Assembly: GCA_009103225.1 (NCBI GenBank) | Contig: RHPI01002998.1 | Location: 95,813 to 159,812, forward strand | Origin: Chlorokybus atmophyticus | Lineage: Eukaryota; Plantae; Mesostigma and Chlorokybus algae | Direction: 5' to 3' | Length of the DNA stretch: 64,000 bases | Part shown: positions 19,535 through 28,267 of the stretch, one piece after another | How the letters are laid out: every line of letters begins with the position of its first letter | How positions within the stretch are numbered: the first letter of the stretch is position 1 | Position numbers and translations under genes: made by a program | The notes under the pieces: model-generated | What the model was told of the DNA's origin: nothing | Seen by the model: only the letters and a program-made list of their open reading frames with translations | Database searches by the model: none

Positions 19535-20575
19535 TGCACAACAGCAGTGGCTGGCCCCACGCTTCACGCTATCATAAGCAACATGCACTCTCCGGACAAT
19601 GTTGTTGCCACATCGCCTCCCACAAGCAAATCACAGCTAGCACAGCTCAGGGTCAAGCTCAAGCTCCAAGTGAAGTGGAGTCTCCCAGCACCAGGTATCC
19701 ACGACCAATTGACATGTGGAAAATGCGACCACAGCTGAACCTAGCTCAATCAAACCCTCAGACAGATGACACCACAACAATGCGACTGTCGAGTCGTCCG
19801 ACAAGCATTCCCCCGCTGCTGCAAGCTGATTGCCAGCTGTCACATCAAAGCCCTAACTAATACACGCTGAGGTGCAGCGTTGCAGCATTGTTGCAAGGTT
19901 TTGCCATGTATGACACCCGTTGTCGCATGCGTTGTATCACAAAAGCATGAAATTGCACAAATGGATGTGTCGCCGACGGCTACGCGCCGTTAGTGTTTAC
20001 CGTTTATACATTTAACGCGAGATCCGGATCTTTTATCCCGAATTGATATTTGAGGTCAGGTCTAGAGCTCTGTGCAAAGCGCCTCTGAGGAGCTGTCTCG
20101 ATATCAACGCCCGGCTGTCACCCAGCCTGGACCGGGTCCCACCCCTTCCTTGGTTAAATGCCGCGCCTTGGAAGTGTGAGACATGCGAAGTTGATCTTTG
20201 TAAGTCACCTGCCAGTCAAATCACCTGGTCCGGGACCCCGATCGCTTGAACACAAGGCTTTAGGTCTAATGAAACAAGTTCTTCAAGAGGTTTTTTCCAG
20301 ACAACCTCATGGGTTTACGTTGCAGTTTTCACTTGAAGCACTCTGCTGACCGAGTCCGCTAACCACTAAGTGTATATCACCTTCATTGGTAGATATCTGG
20401 CTTTTGCCTTGCGAGCTTGCGTTTGTGGTTGCATTTGGTGCCAGCTGGCAGCCAGGTAGGGTTTCGCCCAGCGACGGCTGCCGCGGTGAAGTTGTCCGCG
20501 GCGTGGCCGTCGACTTGGGTGACATTGTTCTGCTGAGCGGCGAGAGAGGTTGGGAGGGGAGAAGGGTGTCTCAGC

Positions 20576-23500
20576 ATGGCGCTTGCTGGCGCTGTGACAG
20601 GGAGTGCTGCTTGCTTGACAGCAGCGCCGGCGCCTGCGGCTGCGGATCTGCTGCCGCCGCGCCAGGCCAGGCGTGGGATGAGCGGTTGCTACCCGATCTC
20701 TGCAACTTCTGGTAAGATAATAAATGTGCTCATTCTAGGTCCACGGCATGACATGCGAGTTATGCCCTCATGTAAGGTGCATGCAATGCAGCAGTGGTCC
20801 TGCGTGGCAGCTTTGTATCCTTGGACAAGGTGACTGCAGAGAGTCAATACCGTGCAATGTGCTTACTGTTGGTTGTGGCCTAGCATTCTGCCTGCCTGTC
20901 TTTTGCTGCTCGTATGGCAGCCTGCATGGCAGCAGCTGATTTGGACGCATGAGCCAGTCTTTATAGCCATATTCGCCAACGGTTCATGAGCTAGCAGCAT
21001 ATCGCTGTTTTGCTTACTTATACATCAACAGTTCACAGCCTTGCGCATGTCTTGGTAACAGATTTCAGATAGGTTAGCATTGCGCCATGCCCGCAAAGCA
21101 TTGCATATTCAGGCTGGCGTGCATGCTAATGGTTGTCATGTCATTGCATTTTGGCAGGAAGCAAGCATATGTCTACATATTCTGGCCTTGCCCGGACCAG
21201 TTCTTCGACTGCAGTGCGAGCATCATCCAGCACGCGCAGAAGCCAGGTGCATACTTGCACCAACGATTGTCAGCTGATATTTGCGCACATTTTCAGCTTG
21301 CATGGGCAGCTGCGCTGATGTGCACAAGTCCGGGCACCACAGTCCTTTCTGCCCAAGTTGAAGTTGCCTGAGCCAGAATTCTTACAAAACTTGGTGCCTC
21401 CCCCTCATATTTATGGTATGCTGTGTCCAGGTGCCAGCTGTAAGGGCAGAAGCCAGGGATTCAGATGTAGATTACCGCCCTAGCCCGTTGGAGGACCCCA
21501 ACCTGAAAGGTGTCTCAAGTCCATACGCCACTCTTGACGACGATGATGAGGAAGACGACGATCTGTATGAGGATGCTGGCGAAGCGACCAGTTATGGTAA
21601 CAGAGATGCTGCCGCCAATGCTGCAGCGCAGTTGGAGGTAAGGCCAGTGCAAATGTTGTTAAACAAAATGTTGTCATGTGCATCTCGGGTAGGTATTGGT
21701 GTGCTTGTTGTTGACTTGGGATCTCAGTGGCATTGCTTGTTGCCTGTTATTGGGCACGTTTTGTTCAAAATTCACGATGTAGTACAACAGCAGTCGACTG
21801 ACTCTGTTAGTGGCACAGTTTGCTGAGCGATACTGTGTTGTCTTGTGCATTTTACTTGAAGCCGGTTGCAGCATGTCAAGTGTGATTGTAACGCTGTGCA
21901 TTGTGACGCTGTGCAGGCATTGCGTAAAGATAACCAGATGCTGCGTGCCCGGATGGAGTCTGCGACATTGTCACCATACAAGGTCCCGCAGCCCTCTGGG
22001 GATGGAACCGATGTGATCAAGGTCAGTTCATGCCTTACACACATGTACAGCAGGTTGTCTCCTGGTTATACACTTTTGGTTCAGTAGCATGCCCTGTACC
22101 CCTGGAGACAGCTAACAAACCACAAACTATGAAGTCATTGACCCGATTTTGCAGATTGACCCTTATCTGGAGCCTTACAAGGGACACTTGCAATACCGTT
22201 ACAGCAAGTTCAAGGAGAGGTTCGCCGAAATTGAGAAGTATGAGGGGGGCTTGGAGAAGTTCTCAAGGGGTTATGAGAAGTTTGGCTTCACTTTGTCTCG
22301 TGACGGCATCACATACAGGTAAGGCCATGCACTCAGCACATCACTTGTGAGTAGTTAGTTATTGCCAATGTCGGGTCTCATAAGTATAAACTGTGCAGAG
22401 AGTGGGCCCCTGCAGCCACGAAGGCTTCCCTGATTGGCGACTTCAATAACTGGGACCAGAACGCTGACCCCATGACTAAGAACCCCTATGGCGTGTTTGA
22501 GCTCAACCTGCCCAACAATGCAGACGGCACGCCTGCCATTCCCCATGGATCGAAGGTCAAGATCCGCATGCTGTCTGAGTCCGGAGAGTGGATTGACCGC
22601 ATTCCCGCGTGGATAAAGTATGCCGTGCAGGTACAAAACTGCAATCTGTATCATCGATCTCAACCTCTGTAGTACCTATATGCTGATACTGGACGCCGGT
22701 GTTCACATTCGGTTTGAGTAATCGTGTCAGCCATAGTTGCCAGGTGTTGGGTCGTGAATGTCATACGTAGTAGTGCAGACATTGGCGCAGACTGCCAGTC
22801 TGCGGATTGCACAACAGAAATGGCCAAGGGTTTTGCTGTCATTGCCTTGTGTAACTGTAACCGTTGCATGCAGCCTGAAGGTCAAGTTCTGTATGATGGT
22901 GTGTACTGGGATGCACCTGAGAAGTACGAGTTCAAGCACCCTAGGCCACCGAAGCCTCGCACTCTGCGCATCTATGAGGCACATGTTGGCATGTCGTCTG
23001 TGGATCCCAAAATCAGGTGAAAATGCGCAACTTATGTCAATGCAGTATTCTAAGTGTGCACTGCTGAAACTGACAGCACCACATGTGTGCAGCACGTACA
23101 TCGAGTTCCGAGACACTGTGCTGCCTCGCATCAAGGATCTGGGCTACAATGCTGTGCAGCTCATGGCCGTCATGGAACACGCGTACTATGGCTCATTTGG
23201 TTACCACATCACAAACTTCTTCGCTGTATCATCAAGGTGACTTATGCACCTGTGCGTGAGCTATTGAAGTTTTGATTGTGCCTGCCCGGTGTGTGTATTG
23301 GTGTACATGCAACACACCAGCAGCAGTTGTGGAAGGGGTGGGGGGGAAGGGGGGCTCATTTCCACCATTATCTCAGAGCAGGTGTGGTTGCTCATGTTGC
23401 TCGCAATCATGAGTTCAACATCTGCTCCTGATGTCTTGCTGCAGGTGTGGAACTCCAGAGGACCTCAAGTCGCTTATCGACCGCGCCCATGAGTTGGGCC

Positions 23501-25874
23501 TGACCGTCCTGATGGACGTTGTGCACAGCCACGCCTCTAAGAACGTGCTTGATGGACTCAACAATTTTGATGGATCAGACTCGCACTACTTCCATTCTGG
23601 AGAGCGTGGTTACCACTGGATGTGGGACTCTCGCCTGTTCAACTATGGCAGCTGGGAGGTATGACAAGCAATGAGTCATACGTTAATGATGGGCTTGTCT
23701 ACATTGCAGCTCACGTCTCAACACTTGTCTCTGCATTGATGGCCTGATTGGCAAGCTGTGCATGCGTGTTGCAGCGGCTAATGTATGTAGTGCATCACAG
23801 GTTATGCGATTCCTTCTCAGCAACCTGCGTTTTTGGATTGAGGAGTACCAGTTTGATGGCTTCCGCTTCGATGGCATTACATCCATGATGTACACTCACC
23901 ACGGCCTGCAGATGACCTTCACTGGTAAGCTACTTGTAGGTGTTACCCTCCGTGGGTATTGGGTCACTTAGCTACTACTATTCAGTCGTTGTCGCTCTGT
24001 GCTGCAGTCAGTATTGTTATACCATCCTGGGTAGTTTGACGCTTACGTTCCTGCTACCTCAGGTGACTATGGCGAGTACCTTGGCCTCAACAGCGACATT
24101 GATGCCATCAACTACCTGATGCTAGCCAACGATATGTTGCACCACTTGTATCCGTTTGTCATCACAATTGCAGGTACATACATCTGTTAATTGTTAAGCG
24201 GATTGGCTAACAACAGCTTGTGCTACTACGGACATGGTTGTTGTCATCTTGTATCTCACCTTCTACACAAATGTGCAGAGGACGTGAGTGGTATGCCAAC
24301 ACTGTGCAGACCGGTTCGCGAGGGTGGTGTTGGCTTTGATTACCGCTTGCAGATGGCTATCGCTGACAAGTGGATTGAAGTCTTAGACGAGTATGTGATA
24401 GTAAAGCAATCACTCTATCAGCATTGCAATGCATCAAGTTGTGCGTTGTTTGGTTCATGCTTGCAGCATTACCAAGCCAATAATCAGTTCGCATAAGACT
24501 TTGCGTTGTACAGGTACAAGGATGAGGAGTGGGATATCGGCAACATCTGCTTTACACTGACCAACCGCAGATGGGATGAAAAATGCATCGCGTACGCCGA
24601 GTCACACGACCAGGCTTTGGTTGGTGACAAGACCATTGCCTTTTGGCTCATGGATAAGGTAAGTGCACGTACGCTTGTGTCAATGGTGTATGTGGTAAGG
24701 TCAGCTCTCGACATAATGTAACCCGGTGTATTGTCAACGTTGTGCATGCATAGTAACCTGCTGCAGATAGTTGGACTGACAGTCTCTGGCACGCAGGAGA
24801 TGTACTGGGGCATGGCGCTTGACAGCCCACCGAACCCCATTGTTGACAGGGGTATTGCACTGCACAAGATGATCCGCCTCATCACGCTCGCTCTTGGTGG
24901 GAATGGCTACCTGAACTTCATGGGCAACGAATTTGGTCACCCAGAGTGGATCGACTTTCCGCGGTGCGTTGTCCAGTTGCACTATCAATGCAGTTGCTGT
25001 CATATGCGGTTGTGTGCTTGGGGTTCTTTAACAACATTTTTGCTGCGGCCAACTTTCGGGACACTTGGCACCTAGAGCTTAGTGGTCGTTGTGTTCGATG
25101 TGTCACATGTTGTTTACACACTGTCTTGCAGTGGTGATCGGTTTGACTCTGTGAAGAACAAGTGGATCCCTGGCAATGGCAACAGCTACGAAAAGTGCAG
25201 ACGACGCTTCGATCTGGCTGATGCCAACTTTCTGAAGTATCAGTGGCTCAACAACTTCGACAGGGCAATGAACCACCTGGATGAGCAGTTTGAGTTCGTT
25301 GCCTCCGAGCACCAATATGTCAGGCAAGCAACGACAGTTGTATCAAGGGTTTTCCACCCAGCTGTTTGTTGGCCTTGGGTGCAAAGGTGTCAAACTTGCA
25401 CTTGTGGTACAGCCGTAAAGATGAAGCCGACAAGCTCATTGTGTTCGAGCGCGGTGACCTGGTCTTTGTTTTTAACTTCCACTACAACCAGAGCTTCACC
25501 GATTACCGCGTGGGCTGTCTGAAGCCTGGCAAGTACAAGGTGTGTGCGTGTTGTAGCAGTTGTCATGACATAGGACAGCTGTATATATGTAGTTCAGGTG
25601 TTCTGCGTTCAGTGCTGACATTATGTGGTTGCGTCAATAGATTGTTCTCAGCACGGATGAGAAGGACTTTGGCGGATGGGCGAATGCCACCAAACATGCG
25701 AATGCTGAGTTCTTCACGCAAGAAGGGTACTACGACAACCGCCCGCACTCGTTCATGGTCTACGCGCCATCTCGCACAGCAGTGGTGTACGCGCCAGCGG
25801 AGTTTAATGATCCCCTCGACCAGTTTTGCGAGGAGAAGCCCGAGGCAGACGAATGCCGCATGTACGACGAATGA
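20576..25874 (+). CDS. SBE2: Starch branching enzyme II (GH13) with transit peptide and C-terminal CP12-like extension
   Basis: Exons reconstruct [120 protein letters not shown] and [10 protein letters not shown], followed by the tail [26 protein letters not shown]. Confidence 0.95.
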
Positions 25875-28267
25875 GGCGGCATTCCCCACACACGGGCTGC
25901 TGACATTGAGGTTGCTCAGGTTGGCAACGTTTGGCAGCGGTTTCTTGTACAGCACAAGACAGGTTACAATTGTGAACCAAACCGTATATTCTTTTTTGTA
26001 CTTAGTCTCTAGATGTTGTTTCGCTTGGTTGGTTGCCTTCATCAGATAGGGTTATCCTTAGGTTAGCAGGCCAGGATGCCTTCTGCTGCAGCTGGTGGGC
26101 GGGTGCAAGAGTTTGAGTTGACTGGTGTTGAATGCATGTCTTTGCCTCTTTTATGATTGCAGGAACTGGGGCATAGTGCAGGTGTCCATACTTGGGCTGT
26201 CATGATGTGAAAATGCAGTCAGTGTGTACGCGGACAGCTGAAAGGTGTGTGACTGGCTTGGCAAAGCCGGAAGGTAGTTGCTTTGGCAGTGGTTGGGGCG
26301 CAATTGTCATTGCAAACGTTGTGCTGCAAGCAAACATAATACCAACTAGGGGTTTTTCCTCGGTGTAATGTTTCCTCTCTGCTCACGTTGCGTATGAACT
26401 TGGATTTGAAGGCCAGCGTGCCGTGTGTACATGCAGTGTACGCAAGTGTTGCTTCCGCACTTGTGCATGCATGCCTTATACCTTATGCATTCGGGACACG
26501 GAAGGTGAGGGCAACGACATCCACATGGTGAGAGGATAATGAGAGCTTAGAGGAGTCGCATGCGTGGACAAGAAGTGGACAATCTGTTGAGGAGGAGGTC
26601 TCGACAGTGGAACCTACTTACGTGCGGTATAGCCACCAACCCATGAAAGAAGCCAGGGGCCCTGAGAAGCGCATGACATCTTTGCTGCAGCTGCTGCTGG
26701 TCACTCACAACTCTCTATGCCAAAGCCGTTGCGAGCGCAACCCTAACACAACGACATAAGACTCGAGACGACCACAGTGGTGCACTGCCCTTGCTTTGGC
26801 AGTTGCGCTAACTGTGGCGTTGCTGTCTCAGGTGAGGCGCAGCTTGTCTTACCTTGCCGCTCCTCGCTTGGCGTGCGACTGAAGGGCCCAGCGCATTGCC
26901 TTTGTTGTGCTTGTCGTATGCTAATTTGCTACTTACCTACTGGTCATCCACTACTACCGACTGCCTTTGCCCACACTGCGCGGTCCATTGCTTGCTTGCT
27001 TGCGTAGGTCGGTAGTGTCGTGCTACTGTACTTGCATATGCATATGTATTGACGATGGCAAGACTCTGCAAGTAGCAACGGCAACGGCAGGACGCAAGAG
27101 CTGTCTAACCCATGTTGCTACAGGTTGGTGGTGATGTCTGTCCCTCCTGCCCCCGCCCCTTCACCTCCCTTGCACGCACTGAGCTGAAGCGCAAAGTCAG
27201 TGTATGCCCCCTGCTGTAATTGAAAGCACTGTGTTCGTGTGGCTTGCTGTATTACTGTGCTGTGTTACCTGTTGTGTGAGGCGACACGTCACCATGAGTG
27301 CTTGATCGTTGCGAAGCTTAAGAACCTCCATGGATTGATTGGTTGATGTGCTGTATTGGCGTTGCGTGTTTTGTATGCATGCCTCCTTGTGCGTGAGCAT
27401 CTATTTCGCTTCGTCCTTGTGCGCGAGCAGGTGTCGTCTGCTCACGCACAAGGAGGAACATGTATGTCCACTCTCAAGCATGCACACCAGGTTCGGCCAG
27501 ACGTATGCAATATAAGCTACACTGTGCAACCCACCATGCATGCTAGTTTAGGCTGCTCATGACACAGGGATCAGTGATCCCTATGTCAGTCAAGTTGTCC
27601 AGTTCGAGCAATCCGGGGCGGGCGTGACGGCGTGCATGTGCGTATGTGCATGCTTGTGTGCACACATGTGTGTGTGACTGTCTGTGCGTGTGCGTGTGCA
27701 AACGCTAGCTGAACAGCGCATAGAAACACCAGTCGGTATGTGCCTGCAACATGCACAAGAGTACGAGGCCATGGGGGAGAAGGTGAGGAAGCAGATGGCG
27801 GAGGTGCAGCTGCGGGTTTATTTTCTAGGCCAACGAGTTGCAGCTGATAACAACGGGGTAGAGTACCGTGCCAACAAGCACGGCACACAAGGCCAAGGCT
27901 AGTGGGTTTGTGGACTGATGGTACATGTGCGTGCATGTTTGCCTGTCCGTGTATGTGTGTATACGTGTATGTGCACGTGTGTTTGGGTTATGGGTGTGCC
28001 AGTGCGTGCGTATGCGCACGTGCGTGTGTACTGGTGTATAAGTCTGTGTCGCTCGCATGCGTGTGTGACGTGTGATAATGCGAGACAACATGCACATAGA
28101 GCAGGTGGCACACAAGGAGTACTCTAGAAGGGGCTTTAATCCGGTTCACATACAATTATCCAAAACTGTAAAGCGGGCAGCTACGGGGTTGCAACTTTCA
28201 GATATCCATCAACTGATGTTTGGGGAGAGGGAAACAACAAAATCAACGAATCCGATGCTTCTTAGAC

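What the first reader, a model, noticed from the sequence alone, without database searches (positions are those of the whole stretch)
25809..25874. Starch branching enzyme II ends in a complete CP12-type redox tail
Seen: in the last exon, in frame and with no intron, the normal SBE end ([10 protein letters not shown]) continues into [26 protein letters not shown], containing the exact Cys-x3-Pro-x4-Cys motif. Known: this matches the C-terminus of CP12 (DPLEEYCKDNPETxECRTYDN type), which forms a thioredoxin-controlled disulfide and binds chloroplast GAPDH. The same module is fused to GapB and to Chlamydomonas ADK3. I know of no described fusion to a starch enzyme. Inference: a light/dark redox switch on amylopectin branching, or dark recruitment of SBE2 to GAPDH or the GAPDH-CP12-PRK complex, directly coupling the Calvin-Benson cycle to starch architecture.
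Basis: partly seen in the sequence, partly recalled or inferred. Interest (0 to 1): 0.9.

Follow-up and report, generated by a model that had tools for sequence, protein, structure and literature searches.

The report
Starch branching enzyme with CP12 tail
A green-alga gene for the enzyme that branches starch ends in a short, expressed and conserved peptide matching the GAPDH-binding end of the Calvin-cycle regulator CP12; this probably ties the enzyme to chloroplast GAPDH according to light/dark redox state, occurs in several algal lineages, and I found no paper describing it.

Summary
The last exon (25641-25874, +) encodes the end of the alpha-amylase C-domain. Three residues later it runs in frame into a 21-residue CP12 C-terminal module ([21 protein letters not shown], then stop).

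- **Module identity:** Pfam CP12 matches at E=1.8e-7, profile positions 50-70 of 70. PDB searches align the tail end-to-end with the GAPDH-bound segment of CP12 and with the GapB extension.
- **Expression:** Spliced RNA contigs from two studies reproduce a 17-exon, 2969-nt mRNA (881 aa, SBE2-type, transit-peptide-like N-terminus). They run unbroken through the tail and stop codon into the 3'UTR.
- **Distribution:** The same fusion, at the same junction, occurs in Closterium, Netrium, Mesostigma and Pyramimonas, in a Cymbomonas-like transcript, and in unidentified contigs. Klebsormidium, Mesotaenium, land plants and Picochlorum lack it. Tail-bearers are not one clade (AU p=4e-6), so several losses or gains are needed.
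- **Other hosts:** In metagenome contigs the module also ends at least eight other plastid protein families.
- **Function:** Redox-gated docking to NAD-GAPDH, as reported for ADK3 and GapB, is inferred, not shown.
- **Literature:** I found no description of the fusion.

The scan noted this same stretch twice, in overlapping windows, and not on other DNA.

The parts
20530..26151 (+). SBE mRNA of 17 exons: 20530-20711, 21158-21246, 21431-21637, 21917-22021, 22155-22318, 22399-22630, 22874-23016, 23093-23236, 23445-23658, 23801-23924, 24063-24173, 24279-24390, 24514-24658, 24797-24963, 25132-25323, 25413-25539, 25641-26151
   Evidence: The joints come from spliced RNA contigs of runs X1, X2 and X4. 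The spliced length of 2969 nt equals the length of the X1 contig, which lies on the window with no mismatch. Splice-site dinucleotides were checked.
20576..25874 (+). Coding sequence from ATG to TGA, 881 aa; a plastid SBE2-type 1,4-alpha-glucan branching enzyme
   Evidence: It is the longest ORF of the spliced mRNA. tblastn with plant SBE2 P0019 gives 51-85% identity per exon where an alignment covers a single exon. The GH13 motifs DVVHSH, GFRFDG, EDVSG and ESHDQ lie at aa 431, 498, 557 and 623.
20576..21460 (+). N-terminal region of about 85 aa (with introns) that looks like a chloroplast transit peptide
   Evidence: Composition is 19 Ala, 14 Ser, 9 Arg and only 3 acidic residues in 85 aa. 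Targeting is inferred; no predictor was available.
22400..22630 (+). Exon encoding the CBM48 domain
   Evidence: Pfam PF02922, E=8.6e-17.
23446..23658 (+). Exon of the alpha-amylase catalytic domain (GH13 region I)
   Evidence: Pfam PF00128, E=3e-6; 85% identity to plant SBE2.
25413..25539 (+). Exon 16, the first half of the Alpha-amylase_C domain
   Evidence: Pfam PF02806, profile positions 5-48, E=1.4e-11.
25540..25640 (+). Last intron, phase 0, GT..AG
   Evidence: The joint 25537>25639 (cut +2) is seen in contigs of X1, X2 and X3.
25641..25793 (+). Coding part of the last exon: the second half of Alpha-amylase_C, ending ...SRTAVVYA
   Evidence: Pfam PF02806, profile positions 50-94 on exon residues 2-52.
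25794..25871 (+). 26-aa C-terminal tail [26 protein letters not shown]: a 5-residue linker followed by the CP12-type GAPDH-binding module
   Evidence: Pfam CP12 profile positions 50-70 of 70, E=1.8e-7. It aligns to the C-termini of CP12 chains 6kez, 3qv1 and 6gve, and to the GapB extension in 2pkq and 7q54.
25827..25856 (+). Cys867-x3-Pro871-x4-Cys876, the presumed redox disulfide loop, with Glu875 just before the second Cys
   Evidence: Read directly from the sequence. C, P, E and C are invariant in 12 SBE tails and in 46 other CP12-type tails. PMC6800369 reports that the CP12 glutamate at this position clashes with the 2'-phosphate of NADP.
25872..25874 (+). Stop codon TGA, five residues after Cys876, the same register as in CP12
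25875..26151 (+). 3' UTR
   Evidence: The X1 contig runs to 26151 and the X2 contig to 26049, both contiguous with the coding exon.

Best explanation
The gene encodes a plastid-targeted SBE2-type starch branching enzyme. Its last 21 residues are the GAPDH-binding C-terminal module of CP12, the same module that forms the C-terminal extension of GapB and the tail of Chlamydomonas ADK3.

**Shown here:**
- the module's identity;
- its expression on the mature mRNA;
- its conservation, at the same junction, in SBE orthologues of both Streptophyta and Chlorophyta.

**Inferred mechanism:**
- In the light the tail is reduced by thioredoxin and disordered, and SBE is free.
- Under oxidising (dark) conditions Cys867 and Cys876 form a disulfide, and the tail folds into the two-turn helix plus extended C-terminus seen in CP12.
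- The folded tail inserts into the cleft of NAD-loaded plastid GAPDH, with Glu875 excluding NADP(H).
- This tethers SBE to GAPDH. The likely outcomes are that SBE is withdrawn from glucan at night, that NADPH-dependent GAPDH activity is reduced, or both.
- The tail lacks the PRK-binding part of CP12, so it cannot bridge to PRK.
For: **Module identity**
- Pfam CP12 matches profile positions 50-70 at E=1.8e-7, above the curated cut-off.
- PDB searches align the tail end-to-end, in the same register to the C-terminus, with the GAPDH-bound segments of Arabidopsis and Thermosynechococcus CP12 and with the GapB extension.
- The positions conserved in 12 SBE tails are the same ones conserved in 46 CP12, GapB and other tails. 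These are D-P-L, Cys1, Pro, Glu-Cys2-Arg, Tyr at +3 and Asp/Glu at +4, with the stop five residues after Cys2.
- The glutamate before Cys2 is reported to clash with the 2'-phosphate of NADP and to be essential for complex formation (PMC6800369).

**Expression**
- Spliced RNA contigs from two studies carry the tail in frame.
- Full-length transcripts with the tail also exist for Pyramimonas (L007/P0155) and Netrium.

**Precedent and context**
- The ADK3 tail is reported to bind GAPDH and inhibit its NADPH-dependent activity (PMC13491260; PMC9406205).
- The module sits at the C-terminus of at least eight other plastid families and of GapB-type GAPDH. This fits a portable docking or redox tag.
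- The AF2 model of the Netrium orthologue gives short helices in the tail at moderate confidence (pLDDT 59-74), consistent with a conditionally ordered peptide.
Against: - No biochemical or interaction data exist for any SBE tail.
- The linker between the last beta-strand of the C-domain and the DPL helix is only about 5 residues. A 90-kDa enzyme might be sterically hindered from presenting the peptide to the GAPDH cleft.
- The tail is absent from many related SBEs: Klebsormidium, Mesotaenium, land plants, Picochlorum and a large marine cluster of unidentified origin. It is therefore dispensable in many lineages.
- In full-length context the Pfam CP12 score of the orthologues is only 19-24 bits, around the 22.7-bit cut-off.
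Confidence: 0.55

Rival explanations
1. The tail is a cis-acting redox switch. Its disulfide changes SBE's own catalysis, stability, oligomeric state or glucan binding, for example by folding back on the C-domain or the active-site groove, and GAPDH is not involved.
For: In GapB the homologous extension regulates the enzyme that carries it (PMC4436894). The very short linker favours contacts with the SBE body. From my own knowledge, not checked here, land-plant BE2 has been reported to be reductively activated, so redox control of branching has precedent.
Against: The positions conserved in the SBE tails are those conserved in tails on unrelated hosts and in free CP12. This points to a common external partner rather than a surface specific to SBE. 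In GapB the apparent cis action is still docking into a GAPDH cleft. The AF2 output gives no evidence on docking.
Confidence: 0.2
2. The tail has another CP12-like role. It could be a localisation tag that holds SBE in the GAPDH-rich stroma next to nascent starch or the pyrenoid. It could be a metal-binding or protective (chaperone-like) peptide. Or it could bind a partner other than GAPDH.
For: Reviews state that CP12 has roles beyond regulation of the Calvin cycle (PMC9406205). The host range of the module is very broad: TPT transporter, fibrillin, glutaredoxin, peroxidase and the FTR variable chain. That breadth is hard to explain by GAPDH inhibition alone.
Against: The conserved Glu-Cys-Arg-x-Tyr-Asp end and the fixed distance to the C-terminus are the features used in the GAPDH cleft. 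No other partner of this segment is named in the papers I read.
Confidence: 0.12
3. The tail is a neutral relic, or an artefact of assembly or gene modelling, with no function.
For: The tail has been lost repeatedly among SBE orthologues. One genome annotation, for Cymbomonas, lacks it.
Against: It lies in the same exon as the SBE core and is present in error-free spliced RNA contigs from two studies. It is conserved at the functionally critical positions across lineages that split at the Chlorophyta/Streptophyta divergence.
Confidence: 0.04

Closest known systems
C-terminal extension (CTE) of chloroplast GAPDH subunit GapB
   Same: It is a CP12-derived C-terminal peptide of about 25-30 residues with the C-x3-P-x4-C pair and an acidic end, fused to a plastid enzyme. 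The window tail aligns to it in PDB chains 2pkq and 7q54. It is thioredoxin-regulated (PMC4436894).
   Different: The GapB host is GAPDH itself, so the tail acts within the same oligomer and drives A8B8 aggregation. Here the host is a GH13 branching enzyme from another pathway, and any action on GAPDH would be in trans.
CP12-like tail of Chlamydomonas adenylate kinase 3 (ADK3)
   Same: It is a non-GAPDH plastid enzyme carrying the CP12 C-terminal module at its extreme C-terminus. It is reported to bind GAPDH and inhibit NADPH-dependent activity as CP12 does (PMC13491260; PMC9406205). This is the closest functional model.
   Different: The host enzyme and pathway differ (nucleotide metabolism versus starch architecture). 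ADK3 has biochemical support and the SBE tail has none. No ADK3 sequence was compared here.
CP12 (PF02672), the GAPDH-CP12-PRK scaffold
   Same: The tail is homologous to the GAPDH-binding domain, profile positions 50-70, with E=5.5e-5 to AtCP12-2. It has the same conserved Glu, Tyr and terminal acidic residues.
   Different: It has no AWD_VEEL motif, no N-terminal cysteine pair and no PRK-binding hairpin. It is not a free small disordered protein.
Cyanobacterial CBS-CP12 fusions
   Same: They are another CP12 fusion architecture. The window tail weakly matches chain 5nmu (E=0.17).
   Different: The CP12 part follows CBS domains in a regulatory protein, not an enzyme of carbon storage. [quoted passage not shown] This is a warning that the motif alone does not prove binding.

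Membership tests
Starch branching enzyme, SBE2-type (GH13, CBM48 + catalytic + C-domain) | CBM48 domain | tested here: met
   Pfam PF02922, E=8.6e-17, on window 22400-22630.
Starch branching enzyme, SBE2-type (GH13, CBM48 + catalytic + C-domain) | GH13 catalytic domain with conserved regions I-IV | tested here: met
   PF00128 matches the exon at 23446-23658. DVVHSH, GFRFDG, EDVSG and ESHDQ are all present in the 881-aa product.
Starch branching enzyme, SBE2-type (GH13, CBM48 + catalytic + C-domain) | Alpha-amylase C-terminal all-beta domain | tested here: met
   PF02806 is split over exons 16 and 17, profile positions 5-48 and 50-94.
Starch branching enzyme, SBE2-type (GH13, CBM48 + catalytic + C-domain) | Groups with SBE2 (class II) sequences of plants and streptophyte algae | tested here: met
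   It shows 72% identity to Klebsormidium 'starch branching enzyme 4' and sits on the streptophyte side of the tree. The plant sequences in the same tree and hit list are annotated branching enzyme 2-1 or 2-2. No SBE1 or SBE3 outgroup was included.
Starch branching enzyme, SBE2-type (GH13, CBM48 + catalytic + C-domain) | Alpha-1,6 branching activity on glucans | not testable with these tools
   This needs an enzyme assay.
CP12 protein family (stand-alone CP12) | C-terminal Cys pair C-x3-P-x4-C with an acidic/aromatic end | tested here: met
CP12 protein family (stand-alone CP12) | Central AWD_VEEL motif (PRK binding) | tested here: not met
   The HMM match covers only profile positions 50-70. 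No AWD.[VLI]EE occurs in any frame of the window.
CP12 protein family (stand-alone CP12) | N-terminal Cys pair / helical hairpin; a small protein of about 80 aa | tested here: not met
   The module is the last 21 residues of an 881-aa enzyme.
CP12-like C-terminal extension on a plastid enzyme (GapB CTE / ADK3 tail class) | Homology to the CP12 GAPDH-binding domain, at the extreme C-terminus and in the same register | tested here: met
   Pfam E=1.8e-7. PDB alignments end at the chain ends of CP12 and GapB. The stop lies five residues after Cys2.
CP12-like C-terminal extension on a plastid enzyme (GapB CTE / ADK3 tail class) | Conserved Glu before the second Cys, and Tyr plus acidic residues after it | tested here: met
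   In 12 SBE tails, Glu is conserved at 100%, Tyr at 91% (Phe in one) and Asp/Glu at +4 at 100%. The role of the Glu comes from PMC6800369.
CP12-like C-terminal extension on a plastid enzyme (GapB CTE / ADK3 tail class) | Host protein is plastid-localised | tested here: inconclusive
   The N-terminus has transit-peptide-like composition, and SBE2 is plastidial in plants by established knowledge. No targeting predictor was available.
CP12-like C-terminal extension on a plastid enzyme (GapB CTE / ADK3 tail class) | Thioredoxin-reversible disulfide | not testable with these tools
   This needs redox titration or thiol labelling.
CP12-like C-terminal extension on a plastid enzyme (GapB CTE / ADK3 tail class) | Binds GAPDH and affects NADPH-dependent activity | not testable with these tools
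   The structure tool folds single chains only. This needs a multimer prediction or biochemistry.

The most novel reading that the evidence does not exclude
The CP12 C-terminal peptide may be an ancient, portable 'dark-docking tag' of green plastids, and SBE one of many client proteins that carry it. Other carriers seen here are the TPT transporter, an ascorbate-peroxidase-like enzyme, glutaredoxin, fibrillin, the FTR variable chain, a GMC oxidoreductase, a folate dehydrogenase/cyclohydrolase and a HAD phosphatase-like protein. First-reader notes add phosphoglucose isomerase in this genome. On oxidation all of these clients would be gathered on NAD-GAPDH. Plastid GAPDH would then act as a redox-gated hub that switched starch branching and other pathways together in the common ancestor of Chlorophyta and Streptophyta, and land plants would retain only the GapB and CP12 remnants.
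Probability: 0.25. Interest if true: 0.85.

Novelty: new variant of a known kind. Interest (0 to 1): 0.7.

Why it matters
How starch synthesis is coordinated with the Calvin-Benson cycle across day and night is understood mainly through ADP-glucose pyrophosphorylase and phosphorylation-dependent enzyme complexes. A direct physical link between a branching enzyme and GAPDH has not been described.

- **A testable handle:** A conserved, expressed CP12 tail on SBE2 in early-diverging green algae can be tested with two cysteines, one peptide and one candidate partner. The result would bear on redox control of amylopectin architecture.
- **Evolution:** It suggests that such coupling may be ancestral in Viridiplantae and was lost in land plants.
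- **A larger client list:** Together with the other hosts found here, it indicates that the set of proteins carrying CP12-type tails is much larger than the GapB, ADK3 and argininosuccinate lyase examples named in current reviews.
- **Annotation:** Domain annotation misses these tails because their Pfam scores fall around the cut-off.

Tried and rejected
**Explanations rejected**
- **Gene-model or assembly artefact:** rejected. The tail shares an exon with the SBE core, and error-free spliced RNA contigs run through it.
- **Motif by chance:** the bare C-x3-P-x4-C pattern is common, with 16 occurrences in six frames. Significance therefore rests on the HMM and PDB alignments.
- **Single clade of tail-bearing SBEs (one recent gain):** rejected. 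The AU test gives p=3.7e-6 and a log-likelihood difference of 733. At least 6 changes are forced by well-supported branches.
- **Recruitment of PRK by the tail itself:** rejected. The PRK-binding half of CP12 is absent.

**Searches that were limited or inconclusive**
- A search with the short C-terminal alignment found only one more tail (P0001). The tool sees only proteins of similar length. Full-length relatives came only after a full-length environmental transcript (L007) gave a usable reference.
- The 50%-identity representative library hid full-length tail-bearers inside tail-less clusters.
- I looked for a separate tail exon in the Cymbomonas genome contig L088. None was found within 3.2 kb downstream of ...VYGPAD, so this stays unresolved.
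- The AF2 model of the Netrium orthologue is only moderately confident (mean pLDDT 69.5). The output does not show whether the tail contacts the enzyme body.
- The window's own spliced 881-aa protein has no single reference. It could not be submitted to the homology, structure or look-up tools, so orthologues were used instead.
- The look-up of sequencing runs was busy four times before answering.
- The organism was not identified. The tree places its SBE on the streptophyte side, outside Klebsormidium, Zygnematophyceae and land plants.
Full report
**Observation.** Window 25641-25871 (+) is an open frame. It encodes the last 52 residues of an alpha-amylase C-domain, ending ...[10 protein letters not shown]. 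It then continues with PAEFN and [21 protein letters not shown], followed by TGA at 25872-25874. Pfam places Alpha-amylase_C (profile 50-94) on exon residues 2-52 and CP12 (profile 50-70 of 70) on residues 56-76. The CP12 match has E=6.5e-7 on the exon, and E=1.8e-7 with 32.3 bits on the 26-residue tail alone, against a cut-off of 22.7 bits. The bare C-x3-P-x4-C pattern occurs 16 times in the six frames of the window, so it means nothing alone. The whole tail is what is significant.

**Gene model and expression.** tblastn with a plant SBE2 (P0019) marks exons from about 22146 to 25802.
- A 2969-nt contig of run X1 and a 2754-nt contig of run X2, from two different studies, lie on the window with no mismatch and skip GT..AG introns.
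- Joining the exons defined by those joints gives an mRNA of exactly 2969 nt, 20530-26151, in 17 exons, one of them with a GC-AG intron.
- Its longest ORF runs from ATG 20576 to TGA 25874 and encodes 881 aa.
- The product has an Ala/Ser/Arg-rich, transit-peptide-like N-terminus, a CBM48 domain and a catalytic domain with the four GH13 regions. It then has the C-domain and the tail.
- The last piece of both contigs is continuous from 25639 through the tail and the stop into the 3'UTR. The last intron (25540-25640) is phase 0 and lies 51 codons upstream of the tail.
- The tail is therefore on the mature mRNA. Contigs cannot exclude rare alternative 3' ends.

**What the tail is.** phmmer against all PDB chains finds only CP12-type sequences.
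- Hits are Arabidopsis CP12-2 (6kez, 3qv1/3rvd; E=5.5e-5), Thermosynechococcus and Synechococcus CP12 (6gve and relatives, 3zdf, 3b1j), the GapB C-terminal extension (2pkq, 7q54) and CBS-CP12 (5nmu).
- Every alignment ends at or within one residue of the end of both sequences.
- According to PMC6800369, CP12 residues 55-75 are the GAPDH-binding domain: a two-turn helix plus a C-terminal stretch that inserts into the active site, held by a disulfide. The conserved Glu69 clashes with the 2'-phosphate of NADP(H) and is essential for complex formation.
- By the alignment, that Glu is the residue just before the second Cys, which is Glu875 here.
- The tail has no counterpart of the AWD_VEEL motif or the N-terminal cysteine pair. 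It is therefore a GapB/ADK3-type extension, not a CP12 protein.

**The fusion in other organisms.** The following tail-bearing sequences were found.
- A full scan of 1.8 billion cluster representatives with the last exon found two fragments with an SBE end plus tail: P0001 from metagenome scaffolds L001-L005, and P0002 from a high-GC contig, L006.
- A pattern scan of JGI metagenome contigs found L007, a full-length mRNA-like contig encoding an 861-aa SBE with the tail.
- Using L007 as a reference gave nine further tail-bearing full-length clusters among the 120 best SBE2 relatives.
- Source names identify Closterium (three strains, NCBI 'unnamed protein product'), Netrium digitus and Mesostigma viride. 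They also identify Pyramimonas sp. CCMP2087, and one Pyramimonas obovata entry with a garbled read-through end.
- Two further clusters have only indirect labels. One is a metatranscriptome protein 91% identical to Cymbomonas tetramitiformis. The other is labelled as the amoeba Leptophrys vorax but sits inside the Closterium clade, so it is probably prey RNA (inference).
- The fusion thus occurs in both Streptophyta and Chlorophyta (Pyramimonadophyceae).
- It is absent from Klebsormidium SBE4, Mesotaenium, all land plants listed, Picochlorum and a large marine cluster of unidentified origin.

**Conservation and phylogeny of the tail.**
- In 10 of 12 tails the module begins at the same place, [AG]P[AT][DE][FY]-x-[DE]PL. 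The other two have 3-4 extra residues.
- The invariant or near-invariant tail positions are P, L, Cys1, Pro, Glu, Cys2, Arg, Tyr and Asp. These are the same positions conserved in 46 other CP12-type tails.
- In a 42-sequence maximum-likelihood tree, the window's SBE lies on the streptophyte side, outside Klebsormidium, Zygnematophyceae and land plants. The tail label needs at least 6-7 changes.
- Forcing the tail-bearers into one clade costs 733 log-likelihood units (AU p=3.7e-6). A few tail-start columns were still in the alignment, which makes this rejection conservative.
- The conserved junction favours one ancient fusion followed by repeated loss. Recurrent gain cannot be excluded, because the module is clearly mobile.
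- In full-length context the Pfam CP12 score of the orthologues is 19-24 bits, around the cut-off, and the precomputed domain lists omit it. This explains why the fusion is unannotated.

**The module on other proteins.** The same metagenome scan returned canonical CP12, cyanophage CP12 and GapB-type GAPDH. It also returned open reading frames that end in the same peptide after other domains:
- a GMC oxidoreductase;
- a triose-phosphate-translocator family transporter;
- a peroxidase (ascorbate-peroxidase-like);
- a PAP/fibrillin;
- a glutaredoxin;
- a tetrahydrofolate dehydrogenase/cyclohydrolase;
- a HAD hydrolase;
- the ferredoxin-thioredoxin-reductase variable chain.

First-reader notes on this same genome mention a similar tail on phosphoglucose isomerase (s1-079315; not checked). 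SBE is therefore one client of a portable tag.

**Mechanism.** These points are shown: the module's identity, its position, its expression, and conservation of the GAPDH-contact positions. The rest is inferred by analogy with CP12, GapB and ADK3 (PMC4436894; PMC9406205; PMC13491260).
- Oxidation forms the Cys867-Cys876 disulfide.
- The ordered tail docks into NAD-GAPDH.
- Thioredoxin releases it in the light.
- Because the PRK-binding half of CP12 is missing, the tail cannot by itself build a CP12-like ternary complex.
- I rate redox-gated GAPDH docking at about 0.55, a purely cis redox switch at 0.2, another partner or role at 0.12, and relic or artefact at 0.04.

The main caveats are these:
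- the 5-residue linker may hinder docking;
- the CBS-CP12 precedent shows a motif without complex formation;
- the tail has been lost repeatedly;
- there are no experimental data on any SBE tail.

The AF2 model of the Netrium orthologue gives helices in the tail at pLDDT 59-74, but it cannot show docking.

**Novelty.** Seven full-text searches and six papers read by term search, including CP12 reviews of 2014, 2015 and 2022 and a 2026 survey of GapB and CP12 across Viridiplantae, name only four CP12 fusions. These are GapB, ADK3, argininosuccinate lyase and CBS-CP12. None mentions a branching enzyme. The library lacks most subscription journals, so an earlier mention cannot be excluded. The tail module is known; the host, the link to a different pathway and the breadth of hosts are new. 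I class the finding as a new variant of a known kind, with interest 0.7.

Noticed in passing
P0124-P0153 and P0157-P0159 (fetched proteins; not in the window): Many chlorophyte SBE2-type enzymes, including Picochlorum, end in a different conserved extension after ...YAPAEF: C-D-x-D-A-D-x-K-P-x-G-[IV]-P-G-L-G-[IV]-K-G-x-G-P-Y-[FY]. A large marine cluster ends ...APADLAEELLGFSAPNVAK. The SBE2 C-terminus thus carries lineage-specific tails whose function I do not know.
   Followed up: no
L008-L086 (JGI metagenome and metatranscriptome contigs): CP12 C-terminal tails end at least eight other plastid protein families: GMC oxidoreductase, TPT transporter, peroxidase, PAP_fibrillin, glutaredoxin, THF dehydrogenase/cyclohydrolase, HAD hydrolase and the FTR variable chain. 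They also end GapB-type GAPDH. Pfam confirmed one example of each. None of these hosts is named in the reviews I read.
   Followed up: partly
P0056 (ENA metagenome protein, 74 aa): This predicted protein ends in two tandem copies of the CP12 C-terminal peptide (...FCQENPDADECRVYEG repeated).
   Followed up: no
window 25324-25412: This is a GC-AG intron in the SBE gene. It is the only in-frame splice at this junction and is consistent with the RNA contig length.
   Followed up: yes
L088 14018-17317 (Cymbomonas tetramitiformis LGRX02033091.1): The annotated SBE (KAK3242998.1) stops matching at ...VYGPAD and has no tail. No tail-coding sequence lies within 3.2 kb downstream. Yet a 91%-identical metatranscriptome protein (P0164) continues with YADPLDELCDENPSAIECKTYD. 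Either there is an intron at the exact junction with a distant exon, or this species has lost the tail.
   Followed up: partly
window 20455-24930 (run X4): A 2150-nt RNA contig of the same coded organism differs from the window at 2-5% of positions, with small indels near the 5' end. This suggests a diverged strain or cryptic sister species in the 2021 study.
   Followed up: no
P0176 (EukProt EP00475, labelled Leptophrys vorax): This tail-bearing SBE is attributed to a vampyrellid amoeba but nests inside the Closterium clade. It is probably algal prey RNA in the transcriptome.
   Followed up: partly
same genome, other pieces (first-reader notes s1-079315, s1-192598, s1-194395): Unchecked notes report a CP12/GapB-like tail on phosphoglucose isomerase, a two-cysteine acidic end on NADH-GOGAT, and tandem cysteine-poor CP12-like proteins in this genome. 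If the phosphoglucose isomerase tail is real, a second enzyme on the route to starch carries the tag.
   Followed up: no
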